A model generated the notes under the pieces. The model was not told the origin of the DNA. It did not search any database and worked only from the letters and a program-made list of their open reading frames with translations. A stretch of DNA of 64,000 nucleotides, taken from contig NW_027271335.1 of assembly GCF_040938485.1 (NCBI RefSeq), positions 620,001 to 684,000 on the forward strand, given 5' to 3'. The DNA comes from Diadema antillarum (taxonomy: Eukaryota). Positions within the stretch are counted from its first letter, which is position 1. Each line of letters begins with the position of its first letter. Positions 986 through 23,346 of this stretch are shown piece by piece. Position numbers and translations under genes: made by a program.

Positions 986-1969
986 TCAAACTCGCGACAA
1001 AGCGTCTGCTAATTTGTTGTCCTTTCCTGTTATGTGCACAATTCTCAGTGGGTACGGCTGGAGAATCAAACTCCAACGGAAGAGACGCTGATTTTTGTGT
1101 TTGAAGCGTTCTAAGAATGTCAATGGGTTATGGTCAGTGTACACCACGATGTCTCTTCCACCGTCCAAATACGCTTCGAAATGTTGCACCGCTAGAACGA
1201 CACTGAGGCATTCCTTCTCCACAGTTGAATACTTTTCCTGATGGCGATTCAGTTTTTTGGAGAAGAAACACACGGGTTTGCTGTGTCCGTTGTCGTCGTC
1301 CTGAAGTAGCACGGCTCCTACTCCTCGGTCACTAGCATCCGTAGCTAGCTGGAAGCTCCTCTCGAAGTTTGGTGCGATGAGCACGGGATCGTTCATGAGG
1401 ATGGCCTTCAGCTTCTGGAACGCACCCTGGCAGCTCGCCGACCACTGGAACGTTGTACCCTTTTTCAACAGGTCCGTCAAGGGCATTACCAAGTGACTGA
1501 AATTGGGAACGAACCTCCGGTAAAATCCGCACATTCCCAAGAAGCGCTGAAGCTCCCGTTTCGATGCCGGCACTGGGAAGTCCACGATGGCTCGGACCTT
1601 TGCATCTCGTGGTGCGACGCTTCCTCGGCCTACCTTGTGACCTAGGTAGGTCACACAAGCTTTCCCAAACTCACATTTGGCCAGATTCACCACGAGTCCT
1701 GCATGTGACAACCTCCGGAACAGCTCTCGAAGATGAGCAACATGCTCCTCCCACGTATTGCTGAAAACCAACACATCGTCTATATAGACAACACAGTTAT
1801 CATGACCAGCAATAACTCGATTCATCATCCGTTGAAAAGTGGCGGGGGAGTTTTTCATCCCGAAGGGCATGACACGACACTGGCATAACCCGGAGGGCGT
1901 GACAAACGCCGAGATCTCTCTTGCATCCTTGTCTAATGGCACCTGCCAATACCCTTTCATCAAATCCAA
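986..1969 (-). pseudogene. Gypsy reverse transcriptase (C-terminal part) + RNase H
   Basis: DLMKGYWQVP, VMPFGMKNSPATFQR, VVYIDDVL, ATDASDRGVGAVL, TVEKECL, YTDHNPL, NKLADALSR. The frame extends upstream (EECIDRVGSAEYVSKL) to a small deletion near 2015. Confidence 0.92.
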
Positions 1970-1992
1970 TTTGCTGACATACTCAGCACTTC

Positions 1993-2658
1993 CTACCCGA
2001 TCAATACATTCCTCAAAGGAAGCGGAAATGAATCAGTCTTGGTTATGGTATTGACCTTCCTGTAATCTATACAAAACCTGGACGTTCCGTCTGCCTTTGG
2101 GACTAGCACTACTGGGGAACTCCAGTTTGAGTTACTAGGCTCTACGATTCCATTTGCAAGCATGAAATCTATCTCCCTATCAACCTGTTCTCTCTTAGCA
2201 GGATGAATCCGATATGGATGCTGCTTTATGGGTGCATTGTCACCAACATCTACCGTATGAACAGTATCGTGTGCACAGCCCAATCTATCACTGCAGACCT
2301 CCAGAAATTCCAGGAAGATGTCGACAACATCTTGCCTCTCCGAATCAGACAGATGACTGAGCAGTAACTCTGGATTTTCTAGTGCCTTTGAGTTCTCTAC
2401 TCGCGGAATCATTCCTGACTTGAAACTCACACTCTGAGAATCTGGAGCATCATGTTCAAACTCTTCTGCACTTTTCTCAGCACTGTGTACGACACTCTCA
2501 CTCACAACTGCACCTCCTTCTTCTACCATCACACGGCTAAATAGCTCCTCAAAAGCCGGAATAGGAATCAACGGCGCAGGTCTAATGGCATGTTGTGGTT
2601 TTCCTACCACTTGACATTCATGACACGTTCGACAAAATTCAGACACATCCTTTCTCAT
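1993..2658 (-). pseudogene. Integrase CxxC remnant fused in frame to linker and RT N-terminus (integrase catalytic core missing)
   Basis: FCRTCHECQVVGKP...PAFEELFSRVMVE jumps to an acidic linker, then PIKQHPYR, WSSPVVLVPKADG, RFCIDYRKVN; frame lost after DSFPLP. Confidence 0.85.
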
Positions 2659-2664
2659 CTTGGG

Positions 2665-4902
2665 CTAGAAGAAATGAGTTCTAATTCTACACAAAGTCTT
2701 CTTGACACCCATGTGTCCGGCCATTGGAATTTCATGTGCAAGACGTAGAATTTCCTTTCGATACGGCGGAGGAACAACTATCTGGTAGACAACCGTCCAG
2801 TCCTCATCTGCGGGACGATCTGGAGGACGCCATTTCCTCATCAAAACACCAGACTTTACATACAAACAGTCTGGCACTCCCTTCGCCTCATCTACAGTCA
2901 ATGCACCCTCTCTCAACTTCAACAATTCCTCATCTTCCATTTGTGCTTTGATTAAAGCTGGCTGACTGAACACACCTTCTTCCCAACTTTGTTCTCTTTC
3001 ACCTTCACTAGTCACCTTACCAAAGAATGTGTCATCAAGAGAAATTTCACTTTCAGACTTCTTTCTCTCACGCTCTGCTTCACTTGCTCGAAACCTGGTG
3101 ATAGCACATGTTGGAAATACTTCTGGGAATTCATCGACCAGTTTTTCGGTTTCCCGCTCGTACACTGGGACTTCAGAAACAACCGGAAGGACACTCACTC
3201 GACCTCCTGCAAGGTCATTACCAAGCAAAAAGGAAACTCCATCCATAGGGAGAAATGGAACAATTCCAACAATCACTTCCCCTGAAATCAGTCCACTATC
3301 CAAATTCACTCGGAATAGAGGGACCGCCTGCGTTCCTCCGTTGACATCATGTATCAGTACCTTTCTACCCGTGTTACAATCTATGGGCATACTCTTCACA
3401 TCTCCTACCATGAGGGACTGTGTAGCTCCAGTATCACGAAGGATGACAACCGGTACTCTAAATTCAGCAATGGTAACTGTACCATTTGAAATGAAGTCCT
3501 TGTACTTTTCATCCACACGACTACTTGAACACCTATCTGTCATTTTTGAGACACTGCTTTTCACAACATTTGGATGACGCTGTTCATCACTTACACTTGA
3601 CTTAACAAAACCATTGGTGGCTGTCTGGTTCGGTTTCTCTTTTGTTTCAGCATCTGAAATGTTCTGTGAACGTGCATGGACTAAACCATGTGTTGCTTTT
3701 TGCTTTTGTTTTTCTTTTGCTTCATTTTGTTCCAGCAATCGCCTACATTCAGACTTAATGTGACCTGTTTTCCCACAGAAAAAGCATCTCACTTCTTTGT
3801 ATTGAGGCCGTGGCGATTTTGGGCGCTCTTTCGGTGATTCAGTCTTTTCCCTATAACTACCGTGCCACTTTTGATTGTCAGGATTTCTCAACTGATCAAA
3901 CTTACTCTTTCCCTCAGGACTTTTTGTTTTCACTTTATGTGTCAACTCATACTGGTCAGCGGTGACTGCTGCACTCTTTACATCATGTACTCTTCGATCT
4001 TCCAAGTATGTTCTCAGATCTGGAGGTGTCGATTTCTTGAACTCCTCCATCAACACTATCCCTCTCAAATTGTCATAAGTGAGATCTACTTTCATTGATC
4101 GAACCCATCGATCAAACATAATTTCTTTTTCTCTCTGAAACTCTATGTAGGTCTGTCCCGAACCTCTCCTATATCCTCGAAACTTTTGCCTGTAGGCTTC
4201 TGGGACTAACTGATAGGCAAGAAGGACTGCTTCCTTAACTGTGTCATAGTCATTTGCCTCCTCATCCGAGAGAGCAGACACTACTGAATGTGCCTTGCCT
4301 GTGAGCTTTTGTTGTACTATCATAGACCAATATTTCTTCTCCCACTCCAAATTCCTGGCTATTCTCCCAAAGGAGAAAAAGAAAGAGTCTACATCCTCTT
4401 CATCAAAGCGGGGGACTGTGTTTGCCATTTTTGCAATGTCGGGCGTCTCTGGCCTCGACATAGTAACATTAGGCCTATCCCCTGGGACGCTACTGGCCTG
4501 TGCCTGAGTCAACTCGATTTGACGTTGCATTAACCCTTGTTCGAGTCTCAGATTTTCTGCCTTCATTTTTTCTTTTTCTAACTCCAATCTAGCCAGTTCT
4601 AGTTGTGTGGAATCTACCCTCATCTCACTAGGTCTAGTAGTAGTAGTAGTACTTGGAGAAGTTCTTCTACCAGCACTCTCAATCTCATCTGTACTCTCAC
4701 TCTGGTCTGTGTGTTCATATTCTACACCACCCAGTTCAAGCTTCTCCACCAGAACTGCAAAAATTTCTTTCTTTCGACTACACTCTCTGATATCAGCATC
4801 TACATGAGTTGCAACCTCAATCAACTGGGCTTTCACTAACCCTCTCAGTCTACCAAGAGTGACGTCTTTCACAAACTCTGCAGCATCGAACTTGGCTGCC
4901 AT
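2665..4902 (-). CDS. Gmr1-type Gag (capsid/SCAN-like, zinc knuckle) + aspartic protease + start of integrase zinc finger; ends at a premature TAG
   Basis: 745 aa. VPRFDEEDVDSFF...AYQLVPEAYRQKFR capsid; CFFCGKTGHIKSEC; ILRDTGATQSL; LAHEIPMAGHMGV. Reads HFF-TAG-PKMRKDV where HFYWP-type Trp is expected. Confidence 0.9.
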   Translation of the reverse strand: MAAKFDAAEFVKDVTLGRLRGLVKAQLIEVATHVDADIRECSRKKEIFAVLVEKLELGGVEYEHTDQSESTDEIESAGRRTSPSTTTTTRPSEMRVDSTQLELARLELEKEKMKAENLRLEQGLMQRQIELTQAQASSVPGDRPNVTMSRPETPDIAKMANTVPRFDEEDVDSFFFSFGRIARNLEWEKKYWSMIVQQKLTGKAHSVVSALSDEEANDYDTVKEAVLLAYQLVPEAYRQKFRGYRRGSGQTYIEFQREKEIMFDRWVRSMKVDLTYDNLRGIVLMEEFKKSTPPDLRTYLEDRRVHDVKSAAVTADQYELTHKVKTKSPEGKSKFDQLRNPDNQKWHGSYREKTESPKERPKSPRPQYKEVRCFFCGKTGHIKSECRRLLEQNEAKEKQKQKATHGLVHARSQNISDAETKEKPNQTATNGFVKSSVSDEQRHPNVVKSSVSKMTDRCSSSRVDEKYKDFISNGTVTIAEFRVPVVILRDTGATQSLMVGDVKSMPIDCNTGRKVLIHDVNGGTQAVPLFRVNLDSGLISGEVIVGIVPFLPMDGVSFLLGNDLAGGRVSVLPVVSEVPVYERETEKLVDEFPEVFPTCAITRFRASEAERERKKSESEISLDDTFFGKVTSEGEREQSWEEGVFSQPALIKAQMEDEELLKLREGALTVDEAKGVPDCLYVKSGVLMRKWRPPDRPADEDWTVVYQIVVPPPYRKEILRLAHEIPMAGHMGVKKTLCRIRTHFF

Positions 4903-7253: not shown

Positions 7254-8408
7254 ATGCGAAAAGAAGTAAATCGCAATAATGTCTGTACTTTGATTGCAAA
7301 GGGATTTTTCAAGGGTGAGGGAGGGAGGGTGGCTGCGGGTAACATCTGGAGAAAACGGTCTAAAGAAGACATGTATGTAAGTAATTTTTTATTGATTATG
7401 TATCTTTCTGTGTGCTTTAAGTACGCACACGACACAGCGATTGATATTCATTTCAACTTAGATTTTGTTATGTGCTCAGCAGTGTTTGCATTTTGCCTTG
7501 ACATACATTCCATGTACGCAACATCAAAATCTGTCTTACCTGGATATATTAATTTGATTTTTCACAATTCTGCCAAGTGCATACTTATGAACGTACGTAT
7601 AACCACTCGTATGTTTAGATTTGAACTGAGAACTGTATTACCATATCCACTATGTAAAGAACCAGTACTCGGTATACCTTTTTACATTGTTCTATGCACG
7701 CTCACTGTGCTTTCTCTCCTGGCGAAATTCACAAAAATTTACATAACAGTGTTAATGAACTTCCTATTGTGTATGCAAAAATGTGTTATGCCGGTGCTCT
7801 CGACCGCTATCAATTTGTCATCAGCTTTGAGCAATCTGTCATCCTTGTGTATCCAAAAATGCATTATTCCGGTGTTTTTGACCTCGCAAATCAATTCACT
7901 ACCTGTTCTCAGCTATTTGTTATTGTACATGCAAAGACGTGTTACCACGGTACTTCCGACTCCTCTCAGTGATTTGTTATCAATGTTTATGCAAAAATGT
8001 GTCATCCCGGTGCTTCTGACTCCTCTACGTAATTTGCCTCCTACCCTCTGCAAACTGTTATCATTGTGTAGGCATAAATGTGTTGCTATGGTGTTTTTGT
8101 TCACCCCCAATTATTTGTTGTCTGTTTGCTCTGGCATTCGCTTCTCTGAACTCTTCAGTGCAATTCTGGCCTCATATAGCCTAGCAACAACCTCATTCCC
8201 TACTTACTATACTGGTGCAGTTACCTTTGCATTTTTGGCATGCATTGTTTTATGTATGGCCATTGGACATTCTTTTCCCATATATTATCAGGGTGAATGT
8301 TCTCCCACTTGTCTCCCTATAAAACCAAGCAGCAGATGTGTTTTTAAGAAGTTATTTCCTGTTTACAGCCTGTCTTCATATTCACCTGCCTTGTATCAGT
8401 CACAATGA
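7254..8408 (+). CDS. Putative ORF1 of LINE A: hydrophobic Leu/Cys-rich protein with ~26-aa tandem repeats, no recognisable domain
   Basis: 384 open codons directly upstream of ORF2; repeats MQKCVMPVL / IQKCIIPVF / MQRRVTTVL / MQKCVIPVL / RHKCVAMVF; stop overlaps the ORF2 ATG (ATGA). Confidence 0.55.
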   Translation: MRKEVNRNNVCTLIAKGFFKGEGGRVAAGNIWRKRSKEDMYVSNFLLIMYLSVCFKYAHDTAIDIHFNLDFVMCSAVFAFCLDIHSMYATSKSVLPGYINLIFHNSAKCILMNVRITTRMFRFELRTVLPYPLCKEPVLGIPFYIVLCTLTVLSLLAKFTKIYITVLMNFLLCMQKCVMPVLSTAINLSSALSNLSSLCIQKCIIPVFLTSQINSLPVLSYLLLYMQRRVTTVLPTPLSDLLSMFMQKCVIPVLLTPLRNLPPTLCKLLSLCRHKCVAMVFLFTPNYLLSVCSGIRFSELFSAILASYSLATTSFPTYYTGAVTFAFLACIVLCMAIGHSFPIYYQGECSPTCLPIKPSSRCVFKKLFPVYSLSSYSPALYQSQ

Positions 8409-11400
8409 TGAATTCAAATACTACTGTAAACTCGAATGCCGCATCAGTTGCCACCCTTTATCCTCAGTCATTTGCTGATATGACACCAGTAATTTCAGTA
8501 GACAGCGAAGAGGGTGAGGATTCCGACATCGTCACTTTCTTAAATATGCAAACTCCTGAATTAAGACTGGATTTTGACTGTAGCGATACAGCAGTCCAAA
8601 ATGTATTCACTCACTACCACACAGAGGATGAGCTTACTTCACTCACTCATACCGACGAAAATCAACTGTTTATTTCACATTTTAATATCAGAAGCTTAAA
8701 TAAAAACTTTGATCAATTTCTTTCTTTTGTGAGTATATTAAAATCCAAATATAATATTATCGGGCTCAGTGAAACTTGGTTGAAGGAGACATCACCCTCT
8801 TCGCTGCTTACTATAGACGGTTTTAAACTCATAACAAATAATAGAACATGGAAGAAAGGTGGGGGAGTCGGATTTTATGTGTCACAGAATTTAGACTGTG
8901 TCTTCTTAGAAAAATACAGCGTGATGTCAGATACATTTGAGAGTGTATTTATCGAGGTCAAAACTTCAAACAAAGGTAATATTATAATTGGGGAGATTTA
9001 TCGACCCCCAAGCTCAAACCCTGCTGAATTTTTAGAGTTATTCTGCGGCCTTATCTCGAACACTTACTTTGACAGTAAGACATGTTTTGTCATGGGTGAT
9101 TTTAATCTCAATCTCCTTAATTACAGTGATAATCACTTATGCGCAGATTTTCTTAATCTTATGTTGTCGAAATCATTTATTCCCCTTATAAGGAAACCGA
9201 CTCGAATAACTGATGATGTATCTACTCTTATTGACAACATTTTTGTAAATGATTCATTTTCTGACATTACATCTGGCATAATAGTTTCTGACGTTACTGA
9301 TCATTTCCCAATTTACGCCCTTGTGTCCAGTTTATGACTGCTAATGCTTCTCACACCCATAACCCAGGTATTCGTGTAATGTCGGAATCCAACCTTAATA
9401 AACTTAGGGAGAAATTAAGTTCAGAGGATTGGTCCACCGTATACAGTCAAAGCGACATTGATTTAGCCTTTGAAAATTTTATGAATATTTTGATGGCTAA
9501 TTATGATTCTTGTGTTCCTCTCCGAAGACCTCACCATTCTAATTATAAAAAAGTACCACGACAACCATGGGTTACAAAATCTCTTCTCAGGTCCATTAAC
9601 CGCAAGAATAAATTTTTTCATAAGTATCGTAAAGATCCATCCCCTTTAAACAAATTAAGATATGTTCGTTATCGGAATATATTGACATCCATAATACGTA
9701 TAGCCAAGCGAAATTATTTTTCCCGACAGTTTGTTAAATATAAATCTGATGTGAAGAGTACGTGGAAGGTGATTAATGAGGCGCTCAAACATAAAAACAA
9801 TACTGATCCTCCTAAATATATTTCAGTGGACGGCCGCCAGATTAACGACCCGGTCAATATGGCGGAATCTTTCAATGATTATTTTGCAACTCTTGGTCCA
9901 CATCTTGCCAGTAAAATCCCGAAATCATCAACTGAATTTTATAGATACTTAGGTAATAGGAATTCTCAATCAATATTTTTTTAACCTATTGCTGAAGAAG
10001 AAATTATAGATATTATTAAGAATTTGAACGATAAAAAAAGTTCAGGATATGATGGAATTACAAATTTTCTTTTAAAAAATGTTTTAAACGAAATCATTAC
10101 TCCTCTCACATACATTTTCAATCAATCCTTATTTAATGGCAAAGTCCCCAATAAGATGAAGGTCGCAAAAGTTGTCCCTATCTTTAAGAAGGGACAGAAA
10201 GATTTGGTGAATAATTACCGACCAATTTCTTTGTTGACTTCAATCTCTAAAATTCTCGAAAGGGTGGTTTACACACGATTATTAAAATTTCTCACAAATC
10301 ATAACATTCTGTCGGATTCTCAGTTTGGTTTTAGAAAACATTACAACACAACCCATGCTTTACTTACTTTTATAGACAAGGTAGCTCATGCTATAGATAG
10401 TTTTGAACATACAATTGGAGTTTTTCTTGATTTTTCTAAAGCTTTCGACACGATAGATCATGAAATCTTGTTTTATAAATTGTGTCACTATGGAATCCGC
10501 GGTACCCCCTTAGAATGGTTTAAGAGTTATTTAACAGAAAGAAAGCAATTTGTTAATATCAATAGCCATGATTCGCAATTAAAGCCTATTTCATGTGGAG
10601 TCCCGCAGGGCTCCCTCTTGGGCCCACTTTTATTTATAGTATACATAAACGATCTTCCAAAATCATCGCAAATTTTGTCATTCATTTGTTTCGCCGATGA
10701 CACAAGCTTGTTTTTTTCACATCGAGACCCTAATGCATTAATGAATATGATGAATACTGAGCTCAGGTCCGTGCAATCCTGGATTTATGCGAACAAATTG
10801 TCCTTGAACATAGAAAAAAACTCATTATATGGTATTTAGTAATTCTTTGAATGTTGTTCCATATGATATCAAAATAAATGATTTATGTTTAAAGCAGGTT
10901 AATAACACAAAGTTTTTAGGGCTTTGGATTGACCAAGAATTATCCTGGAAAACTCATGTTAATTTTGTAAGTAAAATTTTGTCTAGAAATATTGGGATCT
11001 TGAATAAGCTAAAACATTTTTTTCCTGTTCATATTTTGCAGAGTATATATTCTTGTTTAATATCTCCACACTTCAATTATGGAATTTTGGCGTGGGGAAA
11101 TGCAATTCACTCATTACTAGATTCCCTTCTCCGTATTCAAAAGCGTGCAATAAGAATCATAAACCACGCCGGATATTTTGCCCATACCAATTGTTTTTTC
11201 CATCAAAACAGAATTCTGAAAATTTCAGACTTATATTATTATAATCTCGGAATTTTCATGTATAAACTAACAACTAATGAATTACCATCTGTTTTTATCC
11301 ACATGTTCAAAAGGAATCGTTCTATCCACTGTTATCCCACTCGCCAGAGTGACGCCTATCACCTTCCCCGTACTCGCACTATTTTTGCAAAGAAGACAAT

Positions 11401-11527
11401 TATATTTACTGGACCCAGATATTGGAATGATCTCCCTCTAGATATCACTTCTTCCTTATCTTTATTCACCTTCAAACGCAAATTAAAACAGTTATTACTT
11501 AGTGGATACACACTACCAAGCCCTTAG
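8405..11527 (+). pseudogene. LINE A ORF2: AP endonuclease + reverse transcriptase, broken into four ORFs
   Basis: HFNIRSL, GLSETWL, IYRPP, MGDFN, SDVTDHFPI (APE); FLDFSKAFDTIDH, GVPQGSLLGP, FADDT (RT). Frameshift near 9335, in-frame TAA 9982-9984, frameshift in an A-run near 10815. Confidence 0.93.
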
Positions 11528-18396: not shown

Positions 18397-19039
18397 TAAC
18401 ATTGCTGCAACAACAGCCTGCATCAGTGACATAGCTGTGAACAGTCATTCTTATATCCCCGTCACAGAATAGTATTATATATAGCACGAATCAAGCAGAA
18501 GTGACTCGAATGAAAGATTTTCAAAATTCGTGCCACATTCGGGAAAGAATTTAAAATTCCTACAGTTTGTTGAGAATTGTTGTTCTAATACTTGGAACAG
18601 CTTTGTATCGAATCATTCTAATGTGATATTCCGTTTAGCTCTCGAGTGTGGTTCGAATGTAGTTGGAACACAATAGGAATATTAAGAATGCTATTAAAAT
18701 GCAGTCAGAATATTTCAAAAGCACTTCGAATGCCGTACGAATGCCGACCGATTGTAGCTGCTCGAAGTCTGGTTAGCAGGTCTGAAAGCGTCCCGAATGA
18801 AGTACATTGTACAAATTTATCTCGAATGCAGTCAAAAGGCTCCGGGAATAGCTAATAAACATGATTTGAATGTTCAAGAATTCAAACAGAATGCAACGCG
18901 AATATTTAGAATGTACTCATAATGTAAAACGAATATTCCATGATGTGCATCAAGAATCCCGCCGGAATGGTCTGCGATAAGGTTTCAAGTACTGGTGAAT
19001 CGAGCATTTTCATGAGTCTCAGCCCAGCCATGATAGAGT

Positions 19040-19395
19040 ATGGACCGTTTGGACCATGTTGCTTTGCTGCAGATTGCTGTCCTGAGCACGACCTACTTGA
19101 TAGAGAGACGTAGAGAAGGCAAAGAGAAGGAACAGATGGAGAAGACCCTGAAAATATCGCACTCAACCATGGCCGCCAGAGGAGAGCAGGAGGCTGTAGA
19201 GACATTATCCCAGGCTAACGGAGAAGCTTAGAGTTGAAATCCTAAGCCCTTCTTTAAAAACTTCAGGATGGAGCCTGTTATGTTCGATGAGTGGGGCCAA
19301 GGATACAGAAGCAGGAATAATAGATGAGGAACGCACTAACTCCGGGCTTTAAGCTGGCCATCACGGCGCAGTTCCTGGCTTCAGGTGACAATTCA
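19040..19395 (+). pseudogene. PIF/Harbinger (HARBI1-like) transposase N-terminal relic
   Basis: FRMEPVMFDE then VGPRIQKQE**MRNALTPGFKLAITAQFLASGDN matches the Harbinger RM..MFDEL..VGPRI.KQDT..R.A..PG.KLAITLRFLA.GD motif as I recall it. GAATG-rich tract upstream (about 18600-18970). Confidence 0.7.
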
Positions 19396-19420
19396 ATTTC
19401 AATATCAATTCTATTTTGGA

Positions 19421-19477
19421 GTCAAAAGGGGCCTGAGCTTTCGATCCTAGCAGAATCTTCGTCAGAGGCAAAATGAC
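19421..19477 (-). ncRNA. Minimal type I hammerhead ribozyme, copy 1
   Basis: Minus strand GCCU-CUGACGA-A-GAUUC-UGCUA-GGAUC-GAA-AGCU-C^AGGC: stem I 4 bp, stem II 5 bp, palindromic AGCU stem III. Cleavage predicted between 19435 and 19434. Confidence 0.8.
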
Positions 19478-19734
19478 AAACAAGCAGGGAAAGCAATCAC
19501 ATATAAGGACTTCACACAACAGGAACAGAAGTGGGAGTGAAAGAGGGCTAGGAAGGAGACTGAACTGGAACAAAGCAATAAAACAGTTAAAACAATTAAA
19601 ACAGAACAGAGAAGACAAAGAGGATAAGGAGGATCACGTGGGCGTGATGCAACAGCAGAAAATGAACTAAATGTGGCAAAAAAACTGCTGAAAACTGCCT
19701 ATCCAATAAAGGCGAGCCAATGGAGTAAAATGGA

Positions 19735-19791
19735 GTCAAAAGGGGCCTGAGCTTTCGATCCTAGCAGAATCTTCGTCAGAGGCAAAATGAC
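19735..19791 (-). ncRNA. Minimal type I hammerhead ribozyme, copy 2
   Basis: Identical core to copy 1. Cleavage predicted between 19749 and 19748. Confidence 0.8.
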
Positions 19792-20111
19792 AAGCAGGGA
19801 AAGCAATCACATAATAAGGACTTCAATCATAATACGTATAAGGACTTCAATTTTATTTTCGTATTTCTCGATGCAAAATACTTAAAATATAAGAATATAT
19901 TATAATAATAGAGAATGTCCAGCTTGGATATAATACCCAAAAAATACAAAATAGCGGTCGATGTGTCTTTATCAGAGTAAAAGAATGCTATTTTGAATAT
20001 CAGTATTCATGCTTATGACAAACTGTTCTCTTTATGTTTGTGCCTACTTAGATCGTATTAATGTTATGTATAGGACGATCCTATTTTCCTTTGTAGACAA
20101 CGTTATATTAA

Positions 20112-23100
20112 GAGACAACGATAAAATGTGTAACTGCAATATTGCAACAATCTCCACAGTCAAATTGTTCTATACTGCCCTCTACAGGTGCCCTCGTGGA
20201 CTCAAGCAACGGACAACACGCTCACCCTTTCATACGCAATTCTATAGACACAGCATTCAATTCAATTAATGATGATGACTTTTTTGATTTGGCAGGACCT
20301 TCTTTTGAACAAAACGAATCAAATATCAATCAAAATGACATTTTTTTTGATAATTATGTTTCTGACAGTTTTAATTCATCGCCGCAAGAATTAGACTATG
20401 ATTTTGACACAGAGAACCAATTGCAAAGTCCGTCTTCTGAATATCTTACTCAATCCCAATTTACCAATGTTGTCAAGGAATATGATAGTACTACTTTTTC
20501 TCTTTTACATTTTAATATTAGAAGTATTAATAAGCATTTTGAAGAATTGAGGTTATTTTTAAATAGTCCCATCATGCATAATATCTCGGCGGTAGGTTTA
20601 ACCGAAACCTGGCTCTCTCATGACTCCAGTCTTCCCTTCGCTCTCGACGGGTACGATTTAGTGGTTAATAACAGACAAAATAGGGTAGGTGGAGGCGTTG
20701 CCATATATGTTAAACAAAATTATGATTATGTAGTCCGCGATGAGTTCACCAGTATGACTGATTTTTTTGAGTCTTTATTTATTGAAATCACAGTTCCAGG
20801 CAGCAAAAATATAATCATAGGTGTAGTATATAGACCACCAAACGCGAATACTAAATCATTTTTAGATTATTTTTCGGATCTGGTTAAAAACCCACTTTTT
20901 ATCAACAAAAATTGTTTTATAATGGGTGATTTTAATATAGATTTGCTAAAACAGAATAATATGTCGCAAGATTTTTTGGAAATATTTTTGTCTGCCTCTT
21001 TTTTACCCTTAATATCTAAACCCACACGTATAGTTAATGAATCTGTTTCTTTAATTGATAACATTTTTTGTAACATTCTTCCTCCTCCTGATTCTTTTAT
21101 AGTACTCTCAGATATCACCGATCATTTCCCCATCTCGACTGGTTTTTCTTTAAATGGAACAGTTAATAATAAAAACAACAATATATTTAAACGAAGAATT
21201 ACTCATGAAAGTATAGCCAGGCTAGGTGCTAGCTTAGACACCGCAGACTGGTCCTGTATCTTTGATACAGATGATGTTAATTTGTCTTATGAATATTTTA
21301 TGAAGATTTTTATCCAACATTTGGACATTTGTATTCCAAAACGTAGAGAAAAATCAGCTAATTACAAAAAAAATACCCAGGCTCCCATGGATTTCAAAAT
21401 CGCTCCTGCGTTCAATAAATAGAAAGAATAATTTATATTACAGATTTAAAATGAAACGTACTGAGCAATCAAAGTTGAAATACACTAGTTATAAAAATAC
21501 TTTGACGAAAATTATACGAATAGAAAAGAAAAAATATTATACTAATCAGTTACAATTTTACAGGCATGATATGCAAAATACATGGAAAGTTTTAAAGCAA
21601 GCCATGAATATATCAAATGTTAAGTCAAATATTACAAAAATTAGATTTGATGGTGAAATTCTTGAAGATTCTCAACAAATTTGTGATGTTTTGAATAACC
21701 ATTTTTCTTCAATTGGGGAAAGCCTGGCAAGTAATATTCCTCCCTCCACAAAACATTTTTCCGAATTTTTGGGTCCCCCAAATTCTAGTTCAATATTTTT
21801 TAATCCAACATACACTCAGGAGATAATTAATATTGTCTCTGATTTCAGTTCCAAAAAAAGTGCTGGACACGATGACATCAGCAATTTTCTTTTAAAGGGG
21901 GTAATATCGTCAATTGCGGATCCCTTAGCTCATATATTTAATCTATCCCTTTTTAATGGCACCTTCCCCGAAAGTATGAAAATAGCAAAAGTCATCCCCT
22001 TGTTTAAAAAAGGTGACAAATTAGATGTAAATAATTACCGACCAATTTCTTTGTTAAGTGCATTGTCAAAAATTCTTGAAAAAATTATTTATAAAAGAAC
22101 TATTAATTTCTTTAAATTTAATCATATATTTACGAATTCTCAATTTGGATTTAGGGAGAAACATAGCACCACACATGCATTATTGAGTTTTATAGAAAAA
22201 GTGGCACATGCTATCGATAAATCTTCTCATTTGATAGGTTTGTTCCTGGACTTCTCCAAGGCCTTCGACACCATCAATCATGATATTTTACTTAACAAAT
22301 TACACCATTATGGAGTTCGTGGGAAGGCCTTGGAGTGGTTCAGGAGCTACCTCATGAACAGGAAACAATATGTTTCTTTAAATGGTTGTAATTCACAAAT
22401 ATTAAATATTAAATGTGGGGTGCCACAGGGAAGTTTATTAGGTCCACTGTTGTTTACTGTTTACATAAATGATTTTTGTAGATCATCAGATGTTCTTTCT
22501 TTTATTCTTTTTGCAGACGACTCAAATCTATTTTTTTCACACAATAATCTTTTTACCCTTGTTAATACAATAAATTTAGAATTAGAAAATGTTGCCCAGT
22601 GGATAAAAGCAAATAAGCTATCTCTTAACCTTCAAAAAACAAAATATATGCTCTTTAGTAATTCTACTGAGGCATTACCTGTTGATATTGTTTTAGATGG
22701 TACTCCACTCGAAAATGTCTCCCATATAAAATTTCTTGGAGTAACAGTTGACAATAAGCTGTCCTGGAAATTTCATATTGACAGTATATGTAAAATTATT
22801 TCACGTAATATTGGTATAATTAATAAGCTTAAGTTTTGTTTTCCTTTGTCGTCCCTGCTCGTATTATATTCATCCTTAATATTGCCACATTTAAGTTACG
22901 GTATTCTCGCGTGGGGAAATACATATAAAACATTCTTAGATAAATTACTTTTATTGCAAAAGAAATCACTCCGTGTTATATGTCATACTGCATTTTTGTC
23001 CCATACTGACCCACTATTTTATGAGCATAAAATATTGAAAATTAATGATTTGTATTTGTTTAATCTAGGACAATTTATGTATAATTATAATAAAAATAAT

Positions 23101-23346
23101 CTCCCAAATATATTTGAAACAATGTTTCAAAGAAATCAATCCATTCATAATTATCCAACACGGCGATCAAATGATTTCCATTTGCCATTTCTGAGAACTT
23201 TGTTGGCTCAAAACACATTTATTTACGACGGGCCAAAGTACTGGAATTCACTTCCCAGTAACATTACTACTGCTCAATCTCTGAATTTCTTTAAGAATAA
23301 ATTAAAACCATTTTTATTGAAACTTTACAACATCCAACAGAGTTAG
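20112..23346 (+). pseudogene. LINE B ORF2 (AP endonuclease + RT) with a single frameshift
   Basis: HFNIRSI, GLTETWL, VYRPP, MGDFNID, SDITDHFPI; FLDFSKAFDTINH, GVPQGSLLGP, FADDS. One extra A in the A-run near 21365-21373 breaks NYKKIPRLPWISKSLLRSIN. Confidence 0.93.

What the first reader, a model, noticed from the sequence alone, without database searches (positions are those of the whole stretch)
19421..19791. Two tandem minimal hammerhead ribozymes delimiting a 314-nt RNA (retrozyme or Penelope pLTR-like)
Seen: on the minus strand two identical cores GCCU-CUGACGA-A-[GAUUC UGCUA GGAUC]-GAA-AGCU-C^AGGC, with a possible stem I extension GUCA/UGAC beyond an internal loop, spaced exactly 314 nt. 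Established: Penelope-like elements and metazoan non-LTR retrozymes carry such minimal type I hammerheads, whose palindromic stem III lets tandem copies cleave as dimers and release monomers that can circularise. Inference: this locus could yield a 314-nt non-coding linear or circular RNA (19748 to 19435). No Penelope RT or GIY-YIG ORF is adjacent, so it looks non-autonomous.
Basis: partly seen in the sequence, partly recalled or inferred. Interest (0 to 1): 0.75.

Follow-up and report, generated by a model that had tools for sequence, protein, structure and literature searches.

The report
Penelope retroelement remnant with two hammerheads
The two hammerhead ribozyme motifs are real, but they are the two end-repeats of one ordinary Penelope-like retrotransposon copy that lost its 3.8-kb coding interior; this is a one-off remnant in a sea-urchin genome that holds well over a thousand such motifs, not a spreading small-RNA element.

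Summary
Observation confirmed. On the minus strand two identical 57-nt minimal type-I hammerhead motifs lie exactly 314 nt apart, and cleavage would release 19748..19435.

Interpretation partly right. The motif is the Penelope-like-element (PLE) "min-HHR" described in 2014. This genome (Diadema antillarum or a very close relative) has about 1,500 near-identical copies and 0 in a reversed control. Related sub-families keep the core and the AGCU palindrome while stems I and II covary. In other loci the same sequence sits in the pseudo-LTRs of a 4.07-kb element that encodes a 910-aa RT + GIY-YIG protein.

The window copy equals that element with 3,759 nt removed at a 3-nt TCT microhomology. That brings the two pLTR hammerheads within 314 nt of each other. 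The deletion junction occurs only here and in a 99.96-99.97 % identical twin locus on another contig. It is therefore a single ORF-less PLE remnant, not a propagated retrozyme family.

It also lacks two retrozyme traits: the canonical hammerhead and a highly self-paired RNA. Self-cleavage here is possible but untested. Published min-HHRs cleave poorly without protein.

The scan has already noted Penelope-type hammerheads on other pieces of this genome. This locus differs from those I saw only in being a direct, closely spaced pair. Known kind, low interest.

The parts
19735..19791 (-). Upstream min-HHR (5' pLTR copy). The minimal motif GCCU...AGGC is 19783-19745, and the predicted cleavage is between C19749 and A19748.
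   Evidence: motif features matched to PMC4209133; covariation.
19421..19477 (-). Downstream min-HHR (3' pLTR copy), identical to the upstream one. The minimal motif is 19469-19431, and the predicted cleavage is between C19435 and A19434.
19435..19748 (-). The 314-nt segment between the two cleavage sites. It corresponds to PLE unit positions about 492-705 joined to about 4465-4559 of reference locus L034.
   Evidence: alignment to L034; (42 % GC, 46 % paired as a circle, MFE -47.6 against shuffled -44.0 +/- 4.5).
19527..19529 (-). Deletion junction: a TCT microhomology joins '...CCCACTTCT' (L034 ~705) to 'TCTGTTC...' (L034 ~4465). The 3,759 nt that include the whole RT/GIY-YIG ORF are missing.
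   Evidence: The junction 31-mer (19537-19507), with up to 3 mismatches, is found only in C447 and C137.
19418..19846 (-). Whole PLE-derived insertion (429 nt). It holds a short 13-nt partial copy plus 8-11 nt of filler at the 5' end, then the 1.3-unit block. The 3' end is at ...TTTTGACTCC(A).
19847..19859 (-). Candidate target-site duplication, 5' copy (AAAATAAAATTGA).
   Evidence: A match of 13 nt with 1 mismatch arose in 29 of 5,000 shuffles of the flanks.
19405..19417 (-). Candidate target-site duplication, 3' copy (AAAATAGAATTGA), in an AT-rich target.
19653..19690 (-). CAGCAG/CUGCUG hairpin downstream of the upstream HHR. In other copies of the family the second class of 3' ends falls in its loop.
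   Evidence: predicted hairpin; 3' ends at ...CAGCAGCTTTTTTTGCTACA.

Best explanation
The locus is a 429-nt, ORF-less remnant of one copy of an abundant Penelope-like retrotransposon (PLE) of a sea urchin. A normal copy is pLTR-ORF-pLTR with a 4,068-nt unit. Each pLTR carries a minimal type-I hammerhead whose helix III is reduced to the palindrome AGCU, so two copies must pair to build the active double hammerhead. Here 3,759 nt between the pLTRs, including the entire RT + GIY-YIG ORF, are missing, and the break is joined at a TCT microhomology. This leaves the two pLTR hammerheads 314 nt apart in direct orientation. The loss happened either by RT template switching during insertion or by a later genomic deletion; the data cannot tell which. 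In the parent element the ribozymes most likely process multimeric PLE transcripts, probably with help from the PLE protein. If this remnant is transcribed on the minus strand, the same reaction could release a 314-nt RNA. Shown: the motif, its family, the parent element, the deletion architecture and the uniqueness of the junction. Inferred: ribozyme activity, any transcription of this locus, and the timing of the deletion.
For: 1) The motif is real and belongs to a family: 1,497 near-identical cores against 0 in the control, and 1,053 against 15 for the generic pattern.
2) Covariation on 27 distinct variants: 84.8 % of cells are paired, against at most 48.6 % when partners are slid. 7 of 9 pairs show double changes, and the core and AGCU are invariant.
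4) The parent element: the same sequence sits in a >3.3-kb repeat with variable 5' truncation and a 4,068-nt tandem period. It has a 910-aa ORF with RVT_1 at 1.6e-10 and GIY-YIG at 1.4e-3. That ORF has 1,710 relatives whose precomputed domains include RVT_1 and, in many, GIY-YIG.
5) The window copy aligns to L034 412-705 and then to 4465-4577. The junction is clean, with TCT shared.
6) The junction 31-mer is unique to this locus and its twin. The twin is 99.96-99.97 % identical including flanks.
7) The 3' end ...GACTCCA is a recurrent natural end of the family (about 7 of 17 independent census copies). The target is AT-rich and there is a candidate 13-nt TSD. Both fit PLE target-primed insertion with internal RT initiation (PMC11167929).
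8) Cross-species: marine-metagenome relatives (64 % protein identity) carry the hammerhead about 285 nt upstream of the ORF. Their helix III palindrome has changed from AGCU to ACGU, so it is still self-complementary.
Against: No cleavage or expression data exist for this locus. Enforcing the double-hammerhead fold on the 371-nt transcript costs 15.6 kcal/mol relative to the MFE (-56.7 against -72.3). Published min-HHRs cleave poorly in vitro, so activity at this locus may be nil. GIY-YIG scores below Pfam's gathering cut-off in the reference copy (19.4 against 22.6 bits), although the GIY...YIG residues are visible in the translation. Only the best 40 of 2,377 BLAST candidates were scored, and pattern listings are truncated. 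A divergent second copy of the mini-unit (more than 3 mismatches at the junction) could therefore have been missed. No empty or full-length allele was found to date the deletion.
Confidence: 0.85

Rival explanations
1. It is a genuine non-LTR retrozyme: a non-autonomous element whose tandem hammerheads release a 314-nt RNA that circularises and is reverse-transcribed in trans by PLE machinery. In that case this locus would be a young or founding copy.
For: It formally meets the operational criterion of the 2026 preprint: a tandem repeat with complete HHRs in two consecutive units. The unit size falls within 150-450 nt and GC is below 45 %. The unit keeps the HHR together with both recurrent 3'-end (presumed RT initiation) sites and the hairpin. 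The same preprint derives retrozymes from PLE pLTRs.
Against: The junction is unique to this locus and its twin. No other hit among the scored BLAST candidates covers the 1.3-mer. Among the first 100 listed exact-core hits, direct pairs are about 4.1 kb apart, apart from the twin and one 55-nt micro-tandem. The HHR is the PLE 'min' type, not the canonical loop-loop type of described retrozymes. The 314-nt RNA is not highly self-paired (z about -0.8). There are only 1.3 units.
Confidence: 0.08
2. The mini structure was made during retrotransposition and inserted as a 429-nt piece. The RT copied the 3' pLTR, then switched template at the TCT microhomology to the 5' pLTR region. This would replace the idea of a deletion after a full-length insertion. 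It is a variant of the best explanation that differs only in timing.
For: The natural 3' terminus and the candidate TSD bracket the whole 429-nt block. The junction microhomology is short. The 5' end has a partial duplicate plus filler, which is typical of untidy 5' joining.
Against: TSDs and termini would also survive a later internal deletion. The two repeats differ by two indels, which shows some post-origin change or a heterogeneous template. No allele is available to compare.
Confidence: 0.4
3. The hammerhead-like motifs are fortuitous or decayed sequence with no ribozyme function, and they are conserved only because the repeat is young.
For: Rfam finds no hammerhead. The single motif folds no better than shuffles (z -0.35). 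Within family A the copies are nearly identical, so conservation there says little.
Against: Different sub-families and a 64 %-identity relative from other organisms keep the core. They change stems I, II and the helix III palindrome in compensatory ways. The architecture matches experimentally cleaving PLE HHRs.
Confidence: 0.03

Closest known systems
Minimal hammerhead ribozymes (min-HHR) in pLTRs of Penelope-like elements (Cervera & de la Pena 2014, PMC4209133)
   Same: Type-I topology and a CUGAYGA...GAA...UH core. An unpaired nucleotide lies between A9 and G10.1, and G10.1-C11.1 is present. Helix I is 4 bp. There is no helix III hairpin, only a palindromic A-GC-U, which implies dimer action. 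The motif sits in both flanking repeats of an RT + GIY-YIG element. There are thousands of mostly solo or opposite-strand copies per genome.
   Different: Helix II here is 5 bp, against 7-8 bp in the Schistosoma families. The main text of that paper does not mention echinoderms. At this locus the two pLTR motifs are 314 nt apart rather than about 3-4 kb, because the interior is deleted.
Poseidon PAc of Anolis carolinensis (Frangieh et al. 2024, PMC11167929)
   Same: A tandem pLTR-ORF organisation with the HHR near the pLTR/ORF boundary. Insertion ends are defined by internal RT initiation shortly downstream of the HHR, and targets are AT-rich.
   Different: In PAc the HHR overlaps the start codon. 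In this family the core lies about 530 nt upstream of the ORF (core at L034 461, ORF from about 993). Protein-assisted cleavage was shown for PAc and is only assumed here.
Metazoan non-LTR retrozymes (Cervera & de la Pena 2020, PMC7229834; Li et al. 2026 preprint 10.64898/2026.07.22.740005)
   Same: A short (150-450 nt), low-GC, non-coding direct repeat with a type-I HHR in each unit. A link to PLE pLTRs is proposed.
   Different: Described retrozymes are multi-copy families, from dimers up to large arrays. They carry canonical HHRs with loop-loop contacts and give highly self-paired circRNAs. This is a single 1.3-unit locus with a min-HHR and an ordinarily structured RNA.
Newt satellite 2 / Schistosoma SM-alpha hammerhead repeats
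   Same: Repeats of about 330 nt with type-I hammerheads that need a double-hammerhead conformation.
   Different: Those are highly amplified tandem or SINE-like families with a short but real helix III. This locus is a unique deletion derivative.

Membership tests
PLE minimal hammerhead (min-HHR) | Conserved catalytic core C3-U4-G5-A6-N7-G8-A9 ... G12-A13-A14 ... U16.1-H17 | tested here: met
   CUGACGA, GAA and UC are present in both copies. These columns are invariant across 27 variants, but the variants were picked with a pattern that fixes them.
PLE minimal hammerhead (min-HHR) | [quoted passage not shown] | tested here: met
   An A follows CUGACGA in all 27 variants. Column pair 15-29 is G-C in 25 of 27. 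The trait is listed in PMC4209133.
PLE minimal hammerhead (min-HHR) | No helix III hairpin; palindromic 15.2-16.2 that allows a double hammerhead | tested here: met
   AGCU is present in all genome variants, though the search pattern fixes it. The pattern-independent evidence is ACGU, also a palindrome, in a 64 %-identity relative. The double-hammerhead pairing is sterically nested and all its pairs are standard.
PLE minimal hammerhead (min-HHR) | Helices I and II supported by compensatory changes among families | tested here: met
   7 of 9 pairs have changes on both sides. 84.8 % of cells are paired, against 17-49 % in the slid controls. 0 of 500 shuffles reach the observed covariation score.
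PLE minimal hammerhead (min-HHR) | Located in the flanking repeats of an element encoding RT + GIY-YIG | tested here: met
   L034 has cores at 461 and 4529 flanking the ORF at 993-3722, which hits RVT_1 (1.6e-10) and GIY-YIG (1.4e-3, below the gathering score). Many relatives carry PF01541.
PLE minimal hammerhead (min-HHR) | Site-specific self-cleavage | not testable with these tools
   There is no assay here. In the literature, activity is low as dimers in vitro and protein-assisted in PAc.
Metazoan non-LTR retrozyme | Short direct tandem repeat (150-450 bp) with a complete HHR in at least two consecutive units, and no ORF | tested here: met
   two complete HHRs at a 314-nt period. Only about 1.3 units are present, and TRF does not call the repeat.
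Metazoan non-LTR retrozyme | A multi-copy family that propagates as that unit (monomers, dimers, multimers at many loci) | tested here: not met
   The junction 31-mer, with up to 3 mismatches, is found only in C447 and its twin C137. No other scored hit covers the dimer.
Metazoan non-LTR retrozyme | Canonical type-I HHR with helix I/II loop-loop tertiary contacts | tested here: not met
   The motif is the min variant. No match to Rfam Hammerhead_1 in the window. None was detected genome-wide either, but that search is inconclusive.
Metazoan non-LTR retrozyme | Highly self-paired monomer RNA expressed as linear and circular forms | tested here: inconclusive
   The predicted circular fold is 46 % paired and about 0.8 sd below shuffles, so it is not unusually structured. 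Expression is not testable here.

The most novel reading that the evidence does not exclude
The locus is a retrozyme caught at birth. A single internal deletion, or a template switch, turned a Penelope-like element into a 314-nt direct repeat. That repeat keeps the ribozyme pair, both presumed RT initiation sites and the adjacent hairpin, so it could already be cleaved, circularised and mobilised in trans. This would give a concrete one-step route for the proposed origin of animal retrozymes from PLEs.
Probability: 0.1. Interest if true: 0.45.

Novelty: new member of a known kind. Interest (0 to 1): 0.2.

Why it matters
Mostly as a clean negative. A pair of closely spaced direct hammerheads looks like a circular-RNA-producing retrozyme, but here it is explained fully by a routine deletion inside a known type of retrotransposon.

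It has modest positive value in three ways. It documents a Penelope hammerhead family in an echinoderm with good covariation, including a palindrome-preserving change in helix III across species. It shows two recurrent 3' ends just downstream of the ribozyme, which fit the internal-initiation model of PLE reverse transcription. And it illustrates a simple structural route, loss of the interior between two pLTRs, by which retrozyme-like dimers can arise from PLEs.

Tried and rejected
- Rfam at gathering threshold and at E<=10 gave no hammerhead. I did not count this as evidence against the motif, because min-HHRs lack the modelled helix III.
- Rfam Hammerhead_1 over the whole genome gave nothing, and nothing in the control genomes either. 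This is uninformative.
The frequency of short direct pairs therefore rests on the first 100 listed hits.
- I looked for a paralogous empty site. The flanks 18700-19420 and 19830-19988 are unique to C447 and C137, and only the neighbouring LINE (from about 19989) is repeated. No empty or full-length allele was found.
- Single-motif and 371-nt MFE folds are no better than shuffles (z -0.35 and -0.30). This is expected for a dimer-dependent motif.
- A relaxed hammerhead descriptor found nothing in two more distant relatives, L094 (a TARA contig) and L095 (Branchiostoma). The motif may lie outside the fetched flanks or be a variant.
- An adjacent Penelope ORF was rejected: the ORFs at 20142-23346(+) are a LINE with APE endonuclease + RT, on the opposite strand.
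- The C137 copy is not an independent insertion. It matches at 99.96-99.97 % including all flanks.

Full report
**1. What is in the sequence**

Read on the minus strand, window 19791-19735 and 19477-19421 are identical 57-mers. They read GUCA UUUU GCCU CUGACGA A GAUUC UGCUA GGAUC GAA AGCU C^AGGC CCCUUU UGAC.

The repeated block is about 95 nt, with start-to-start spacing of 314. The two copies differ only by two indels upstream of the ribozyme and have no substitutions. The GUCA/UGAC extension of helix I is present and predicted to pair.

Rfam reports no hammerhead, either at gathering thresholds or at E<=10. TRF does not call the 1.3-unit repeat.

**2. Is the motif more than chance?**

Yes. 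The window lies in a 1.75-Gb eukaryotic assembly.
- The 31-nt core with up to 3 mismatches occurs 1,497 times, against 0 for the reversed control.
- A generic CTGANGA-N16-GAAAGCTH pattern gives 1,053 hits against 15.

The generic hits fall into several sequence families. The core, the extra A after A9 and the AGCU are constant, but the search pattern fixes the core and AGCU. Helix II changes in a compensatory way: GAUUC/GGAUC, GAUCC/GGAUC, GGUCC/GGACC, GGUCU/AGACC and GGCC/GGCC. So does helix I: GCCU/AGGC against GCC/GGC.

On an alignment of 27 distinct variants:
- 84.8 % of cells form standard pairs, against 17-49 % when the partners are slid.
- 7 of 9 pairs show changes on both sides.
- No shuffle out of 500 reaches the observed covariation score.

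**3. What it belongs to**

BLAST of the unit against the genome gave 2,377 first-look candidates. In most loci the sequence is not a 314-nt unit. It is embedded in a repeat longer than 3.3 kb, with shared downstream sequence and variable upstream truncation points.

In reference locus L034:
- The hammerhead core lies at 461 and again at 4529, a period of 4,068 nt.
- The cores flank a 910-aa open frame at 993-3722.
- That frame hits RVT_1 (1.6e-10) and GIY-YIG (1.4e-3, below the gathering score). The GIY...YIG residues are visible in the translation.

The frame has 1,710 relatives at E<=1e-10, whose precomputed domains include RVT_1 and, in many, GIY-YIG. The 97 %-identical named hits are from Diadema antillarum. 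One sits on a contig of 6,731,792 bp, which is the length of this assembly's contig C18. The genome is therefore that sea urchin or something very close to it.

The parent is thus a Penelope-like element (PLE) with pseudo-LTRs, and the hammerhead sits in the pLTR.

**4. Match to the literature**

Cervera and de la Pena (2014, PMC4209133) described exactly this "min-HHR" in PLE pLTRs. Its features are:
- type I topology;
- a short helix I;
- a conserved G10.1-C11.1 pair;
- no helix III hairpin but a palindromic 15.2-16.2, implying action as a dimer;
- thousands of mostly solo copies per genome, and nearby pairs on opposite strands;
- low self-cleavage in vitro.

All the sequence traits are met here.

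Frangieh et al. (2024, PMC11167929) showed several things for an Anolis PLE. Reverse transcription initiates internally just downstream of the HHR. This defines characteristic insertion ends. Targets are AT-rich. The HHR is protein-assisted, and its cleavage is dispensable for insertion in vitro.

**5. What the window locus is**

The window copy aligns to L034 412-705 and then directly to L034 4465-4577. Full-length copies read ...CCCACTTCT|CGACTTG... on the left and ...CCCTG|TCTGTTC... on the right. The window reads ...CCCACTTCTGTTC.... So 3,759 nt, including the whole ORF, are missing, and the join is at a 3-nt TCT microhomology (window 19529-19527).

That junction, allowing 3 mismatches, occurs only here and on contig C137. 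The C137 locus is 99.96-99.97 % identical over 3.4-4.8 kb including all flanks. It is the same locus, present as an uncollapsed haplotype or a very recent duplication. Three of 20 census loci had similar twins.

Among the first 100 listed exact-core hits, direct pairs are about 4.1 kb apart, as in full elements. The only exceptions are the twin locus and one 55-nt micro-tandem.

**6. Ends of the insertion**

In a census of 20 copies with an exact core, not chosen for structure (about 17 independent), the 3' ends fall in two classes:
- about +18 nt after the cleavage site (...TTTTGACTCCA);
- about +72-80 nt (...CAGCAGCTTTTTTTGCTACA, in the loop of a CAGCAG/CUGCUG hairpin).

The window copy ends at the first class. 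This is therefore a natural terminus, and it abuts AT-rich DNA.

A 13-nt direct repeat with one mismatch brackets the block: AAAATAAAATTGA at 19859-19847 and AAAATAGAATTGA at 19417-19405. It is plausibly a target-site duplication, since a match this good arose in 29 of 5,000 shuffles. That gives a 429-nt insertion at 19846-19418.

Its 5' end carries a short partial duplicate plus filler. The data do not tell whether the interior was lost during reverse transcription, by a template switch, or afterwards. The flanks are unique, so no empty or full-length allele could be found.

The neighbouring ORFs at 20142-23346(+) belong to a young LINE with APE + RT that starts at about 19989. They are unrelated to PLEs.

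**7. How it probably works**

In the parent element the two (or more) pLTR hammerheads of a multimeric transcript can pair through AGCU to form a double hammerhead and cut out unit-length RNA. Activity is probably weak and helped by the PLE protein. This is inferred.

For the window's 371-nt transcript, the double-hammerhead pairing is topologically nested and all its pairs are standard. Enforcing it costs 15.6 kcal/mol relative to the MFE (-56.7 against -72.3). The 314-nt product is not unusually structured: as a circle it is 46 % paired, at -47.6 kcal/mol against shuffled -44.0 +/- 4.5. Described retrozyme circRNAs, in contrast, are highly self-paired.

Release of a 314-nt RNA is therefore possible if the minus strand is transcribed. 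Nothing here shows that it happens.

**8. Cross-species support**

Marine-metagenome contigs encode a 64 %-identical PLE protein (P0010). They carry gcct-CUGAUGA-A-GGUCC-UGCUA-GGAUC-GAA-ACGU-U^aggc about 285 nt upstream of the ORF, and again downstream of it. The core, the extra A, the loop and helix I are kept. The helix III palindrome changes from AGCU to ACGU, so it stays self-complementary, as a dimer-forming helix III requires. Two more distant relatives gave no hit with my descriptor.

**9. Comparison and verdict**

The feature is a member of the PLE min-HHR class, and all testable defining features are met.

It is not a member of the non-LTR retrozyme family as described (PMC7229834; preprint 10.64898/2026.07.22.740005). 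It meets the formal criterion of two consecutive units with HHRs. It fails on multi-copy propagation and on the canonical HHR type, and it does not look highly self-paired.

It does illustrate a simple way in which a retrozyme-like dimer could arise from a PLE. That fits the preprint's proposal that retrozymes derive from PLE terminal repeats.

Earlier notes of this scan on other pieces of the same genome already recorded Penelope-type minimal hammerheads, mostly inverted pairs or solo copies, and judged them a known kind. My independent tests agree. The only distinction of this locus is the direct, 314-nt spacing, and the interior deletion explains it.

Noticed in passing
L066 = G000:C202:3138011-3138457 (cores at +212 and +267, inverted core at 267 on the minus strand): Two complete family-A min-HHRs lie in direct tandem only 55 nt apart, with a third, inverted copy 61 nt upstream. 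Double cleavage would give a 55-nt RNA that is essentially one ribozyme. L067 (C146:849112-849564) has a partial plus a complete HHR 36 nt apart.
   Followed up: partly
Census loci L071-L090; window 19421 and 19653-19690: Copies of this PLE family end at two recurrent 3' points: about +18 nt (...GACTCCA) and about +72-80 nt (in the loop of a CAGCAG/CUGCUG hairpin) after the hammerhead cleavage site. These are likely alternative internal RT initiation sites, like those shown for the Anolis PAc element.
   Followed up: partly
L011/L012 (G000:C596:1173056-1181162) and many pairs listed (C5, C9, C10, C18, C26, C31, C84, C146, C273): Head-to-head inverted PLE pairs are common. L011 and L012 are 99.94 % identical over 3.3 kb in inverted orientation, forming a large palindrome.
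   Followed up: no
window 27548-61753 (+): Four tandem copies (period about 9.25-9.39 kb) of a Ty3/gypsy-type LTR retrotransposon. Its gag hits the PNMA family, and its pol has RT, RNase H and integrase.
   Followed up: partly
window 19989-23346 (+), and 7254-11527 (+): Two LINE copies with APE endonuclease + RT. The first belongs to a very young family whose 5' 512 nt recur at 98-99 % identity on dozens of contigs. Its 5' end lies about 130 nt from the PLE remnant.
   Followed up: partly
window 2665-4902 (-): A retrotransposon gag-pol fragment whose gag region hits the SCAN domain (6.5e-8). SCAN is usually discussed as a vertebrate domain derived from a gypsy capsid, and here it appears in a sea-urchin element.
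   Followed up: no
G000 contig pairs C447/C137, C2/C21, C30/C37: Near-identical twin loci on different contigs: this locus and 3 of 20 census loci. This suggests the 1.75-Gb assembly holds uncollapsed haplotypes or many recent duplications, so copy counts are inflated.
   Followed up: partly
L091:2217, L092:865, L093:3315 (TARA marine-metagenome contigs): Eukaryotic PLE copies with intact 897-aa ORFs and hammerheads are present in ocean metagenome assemblies. Their helix III palindrome is ACGU rather than AGCU.
   Followed up: partly
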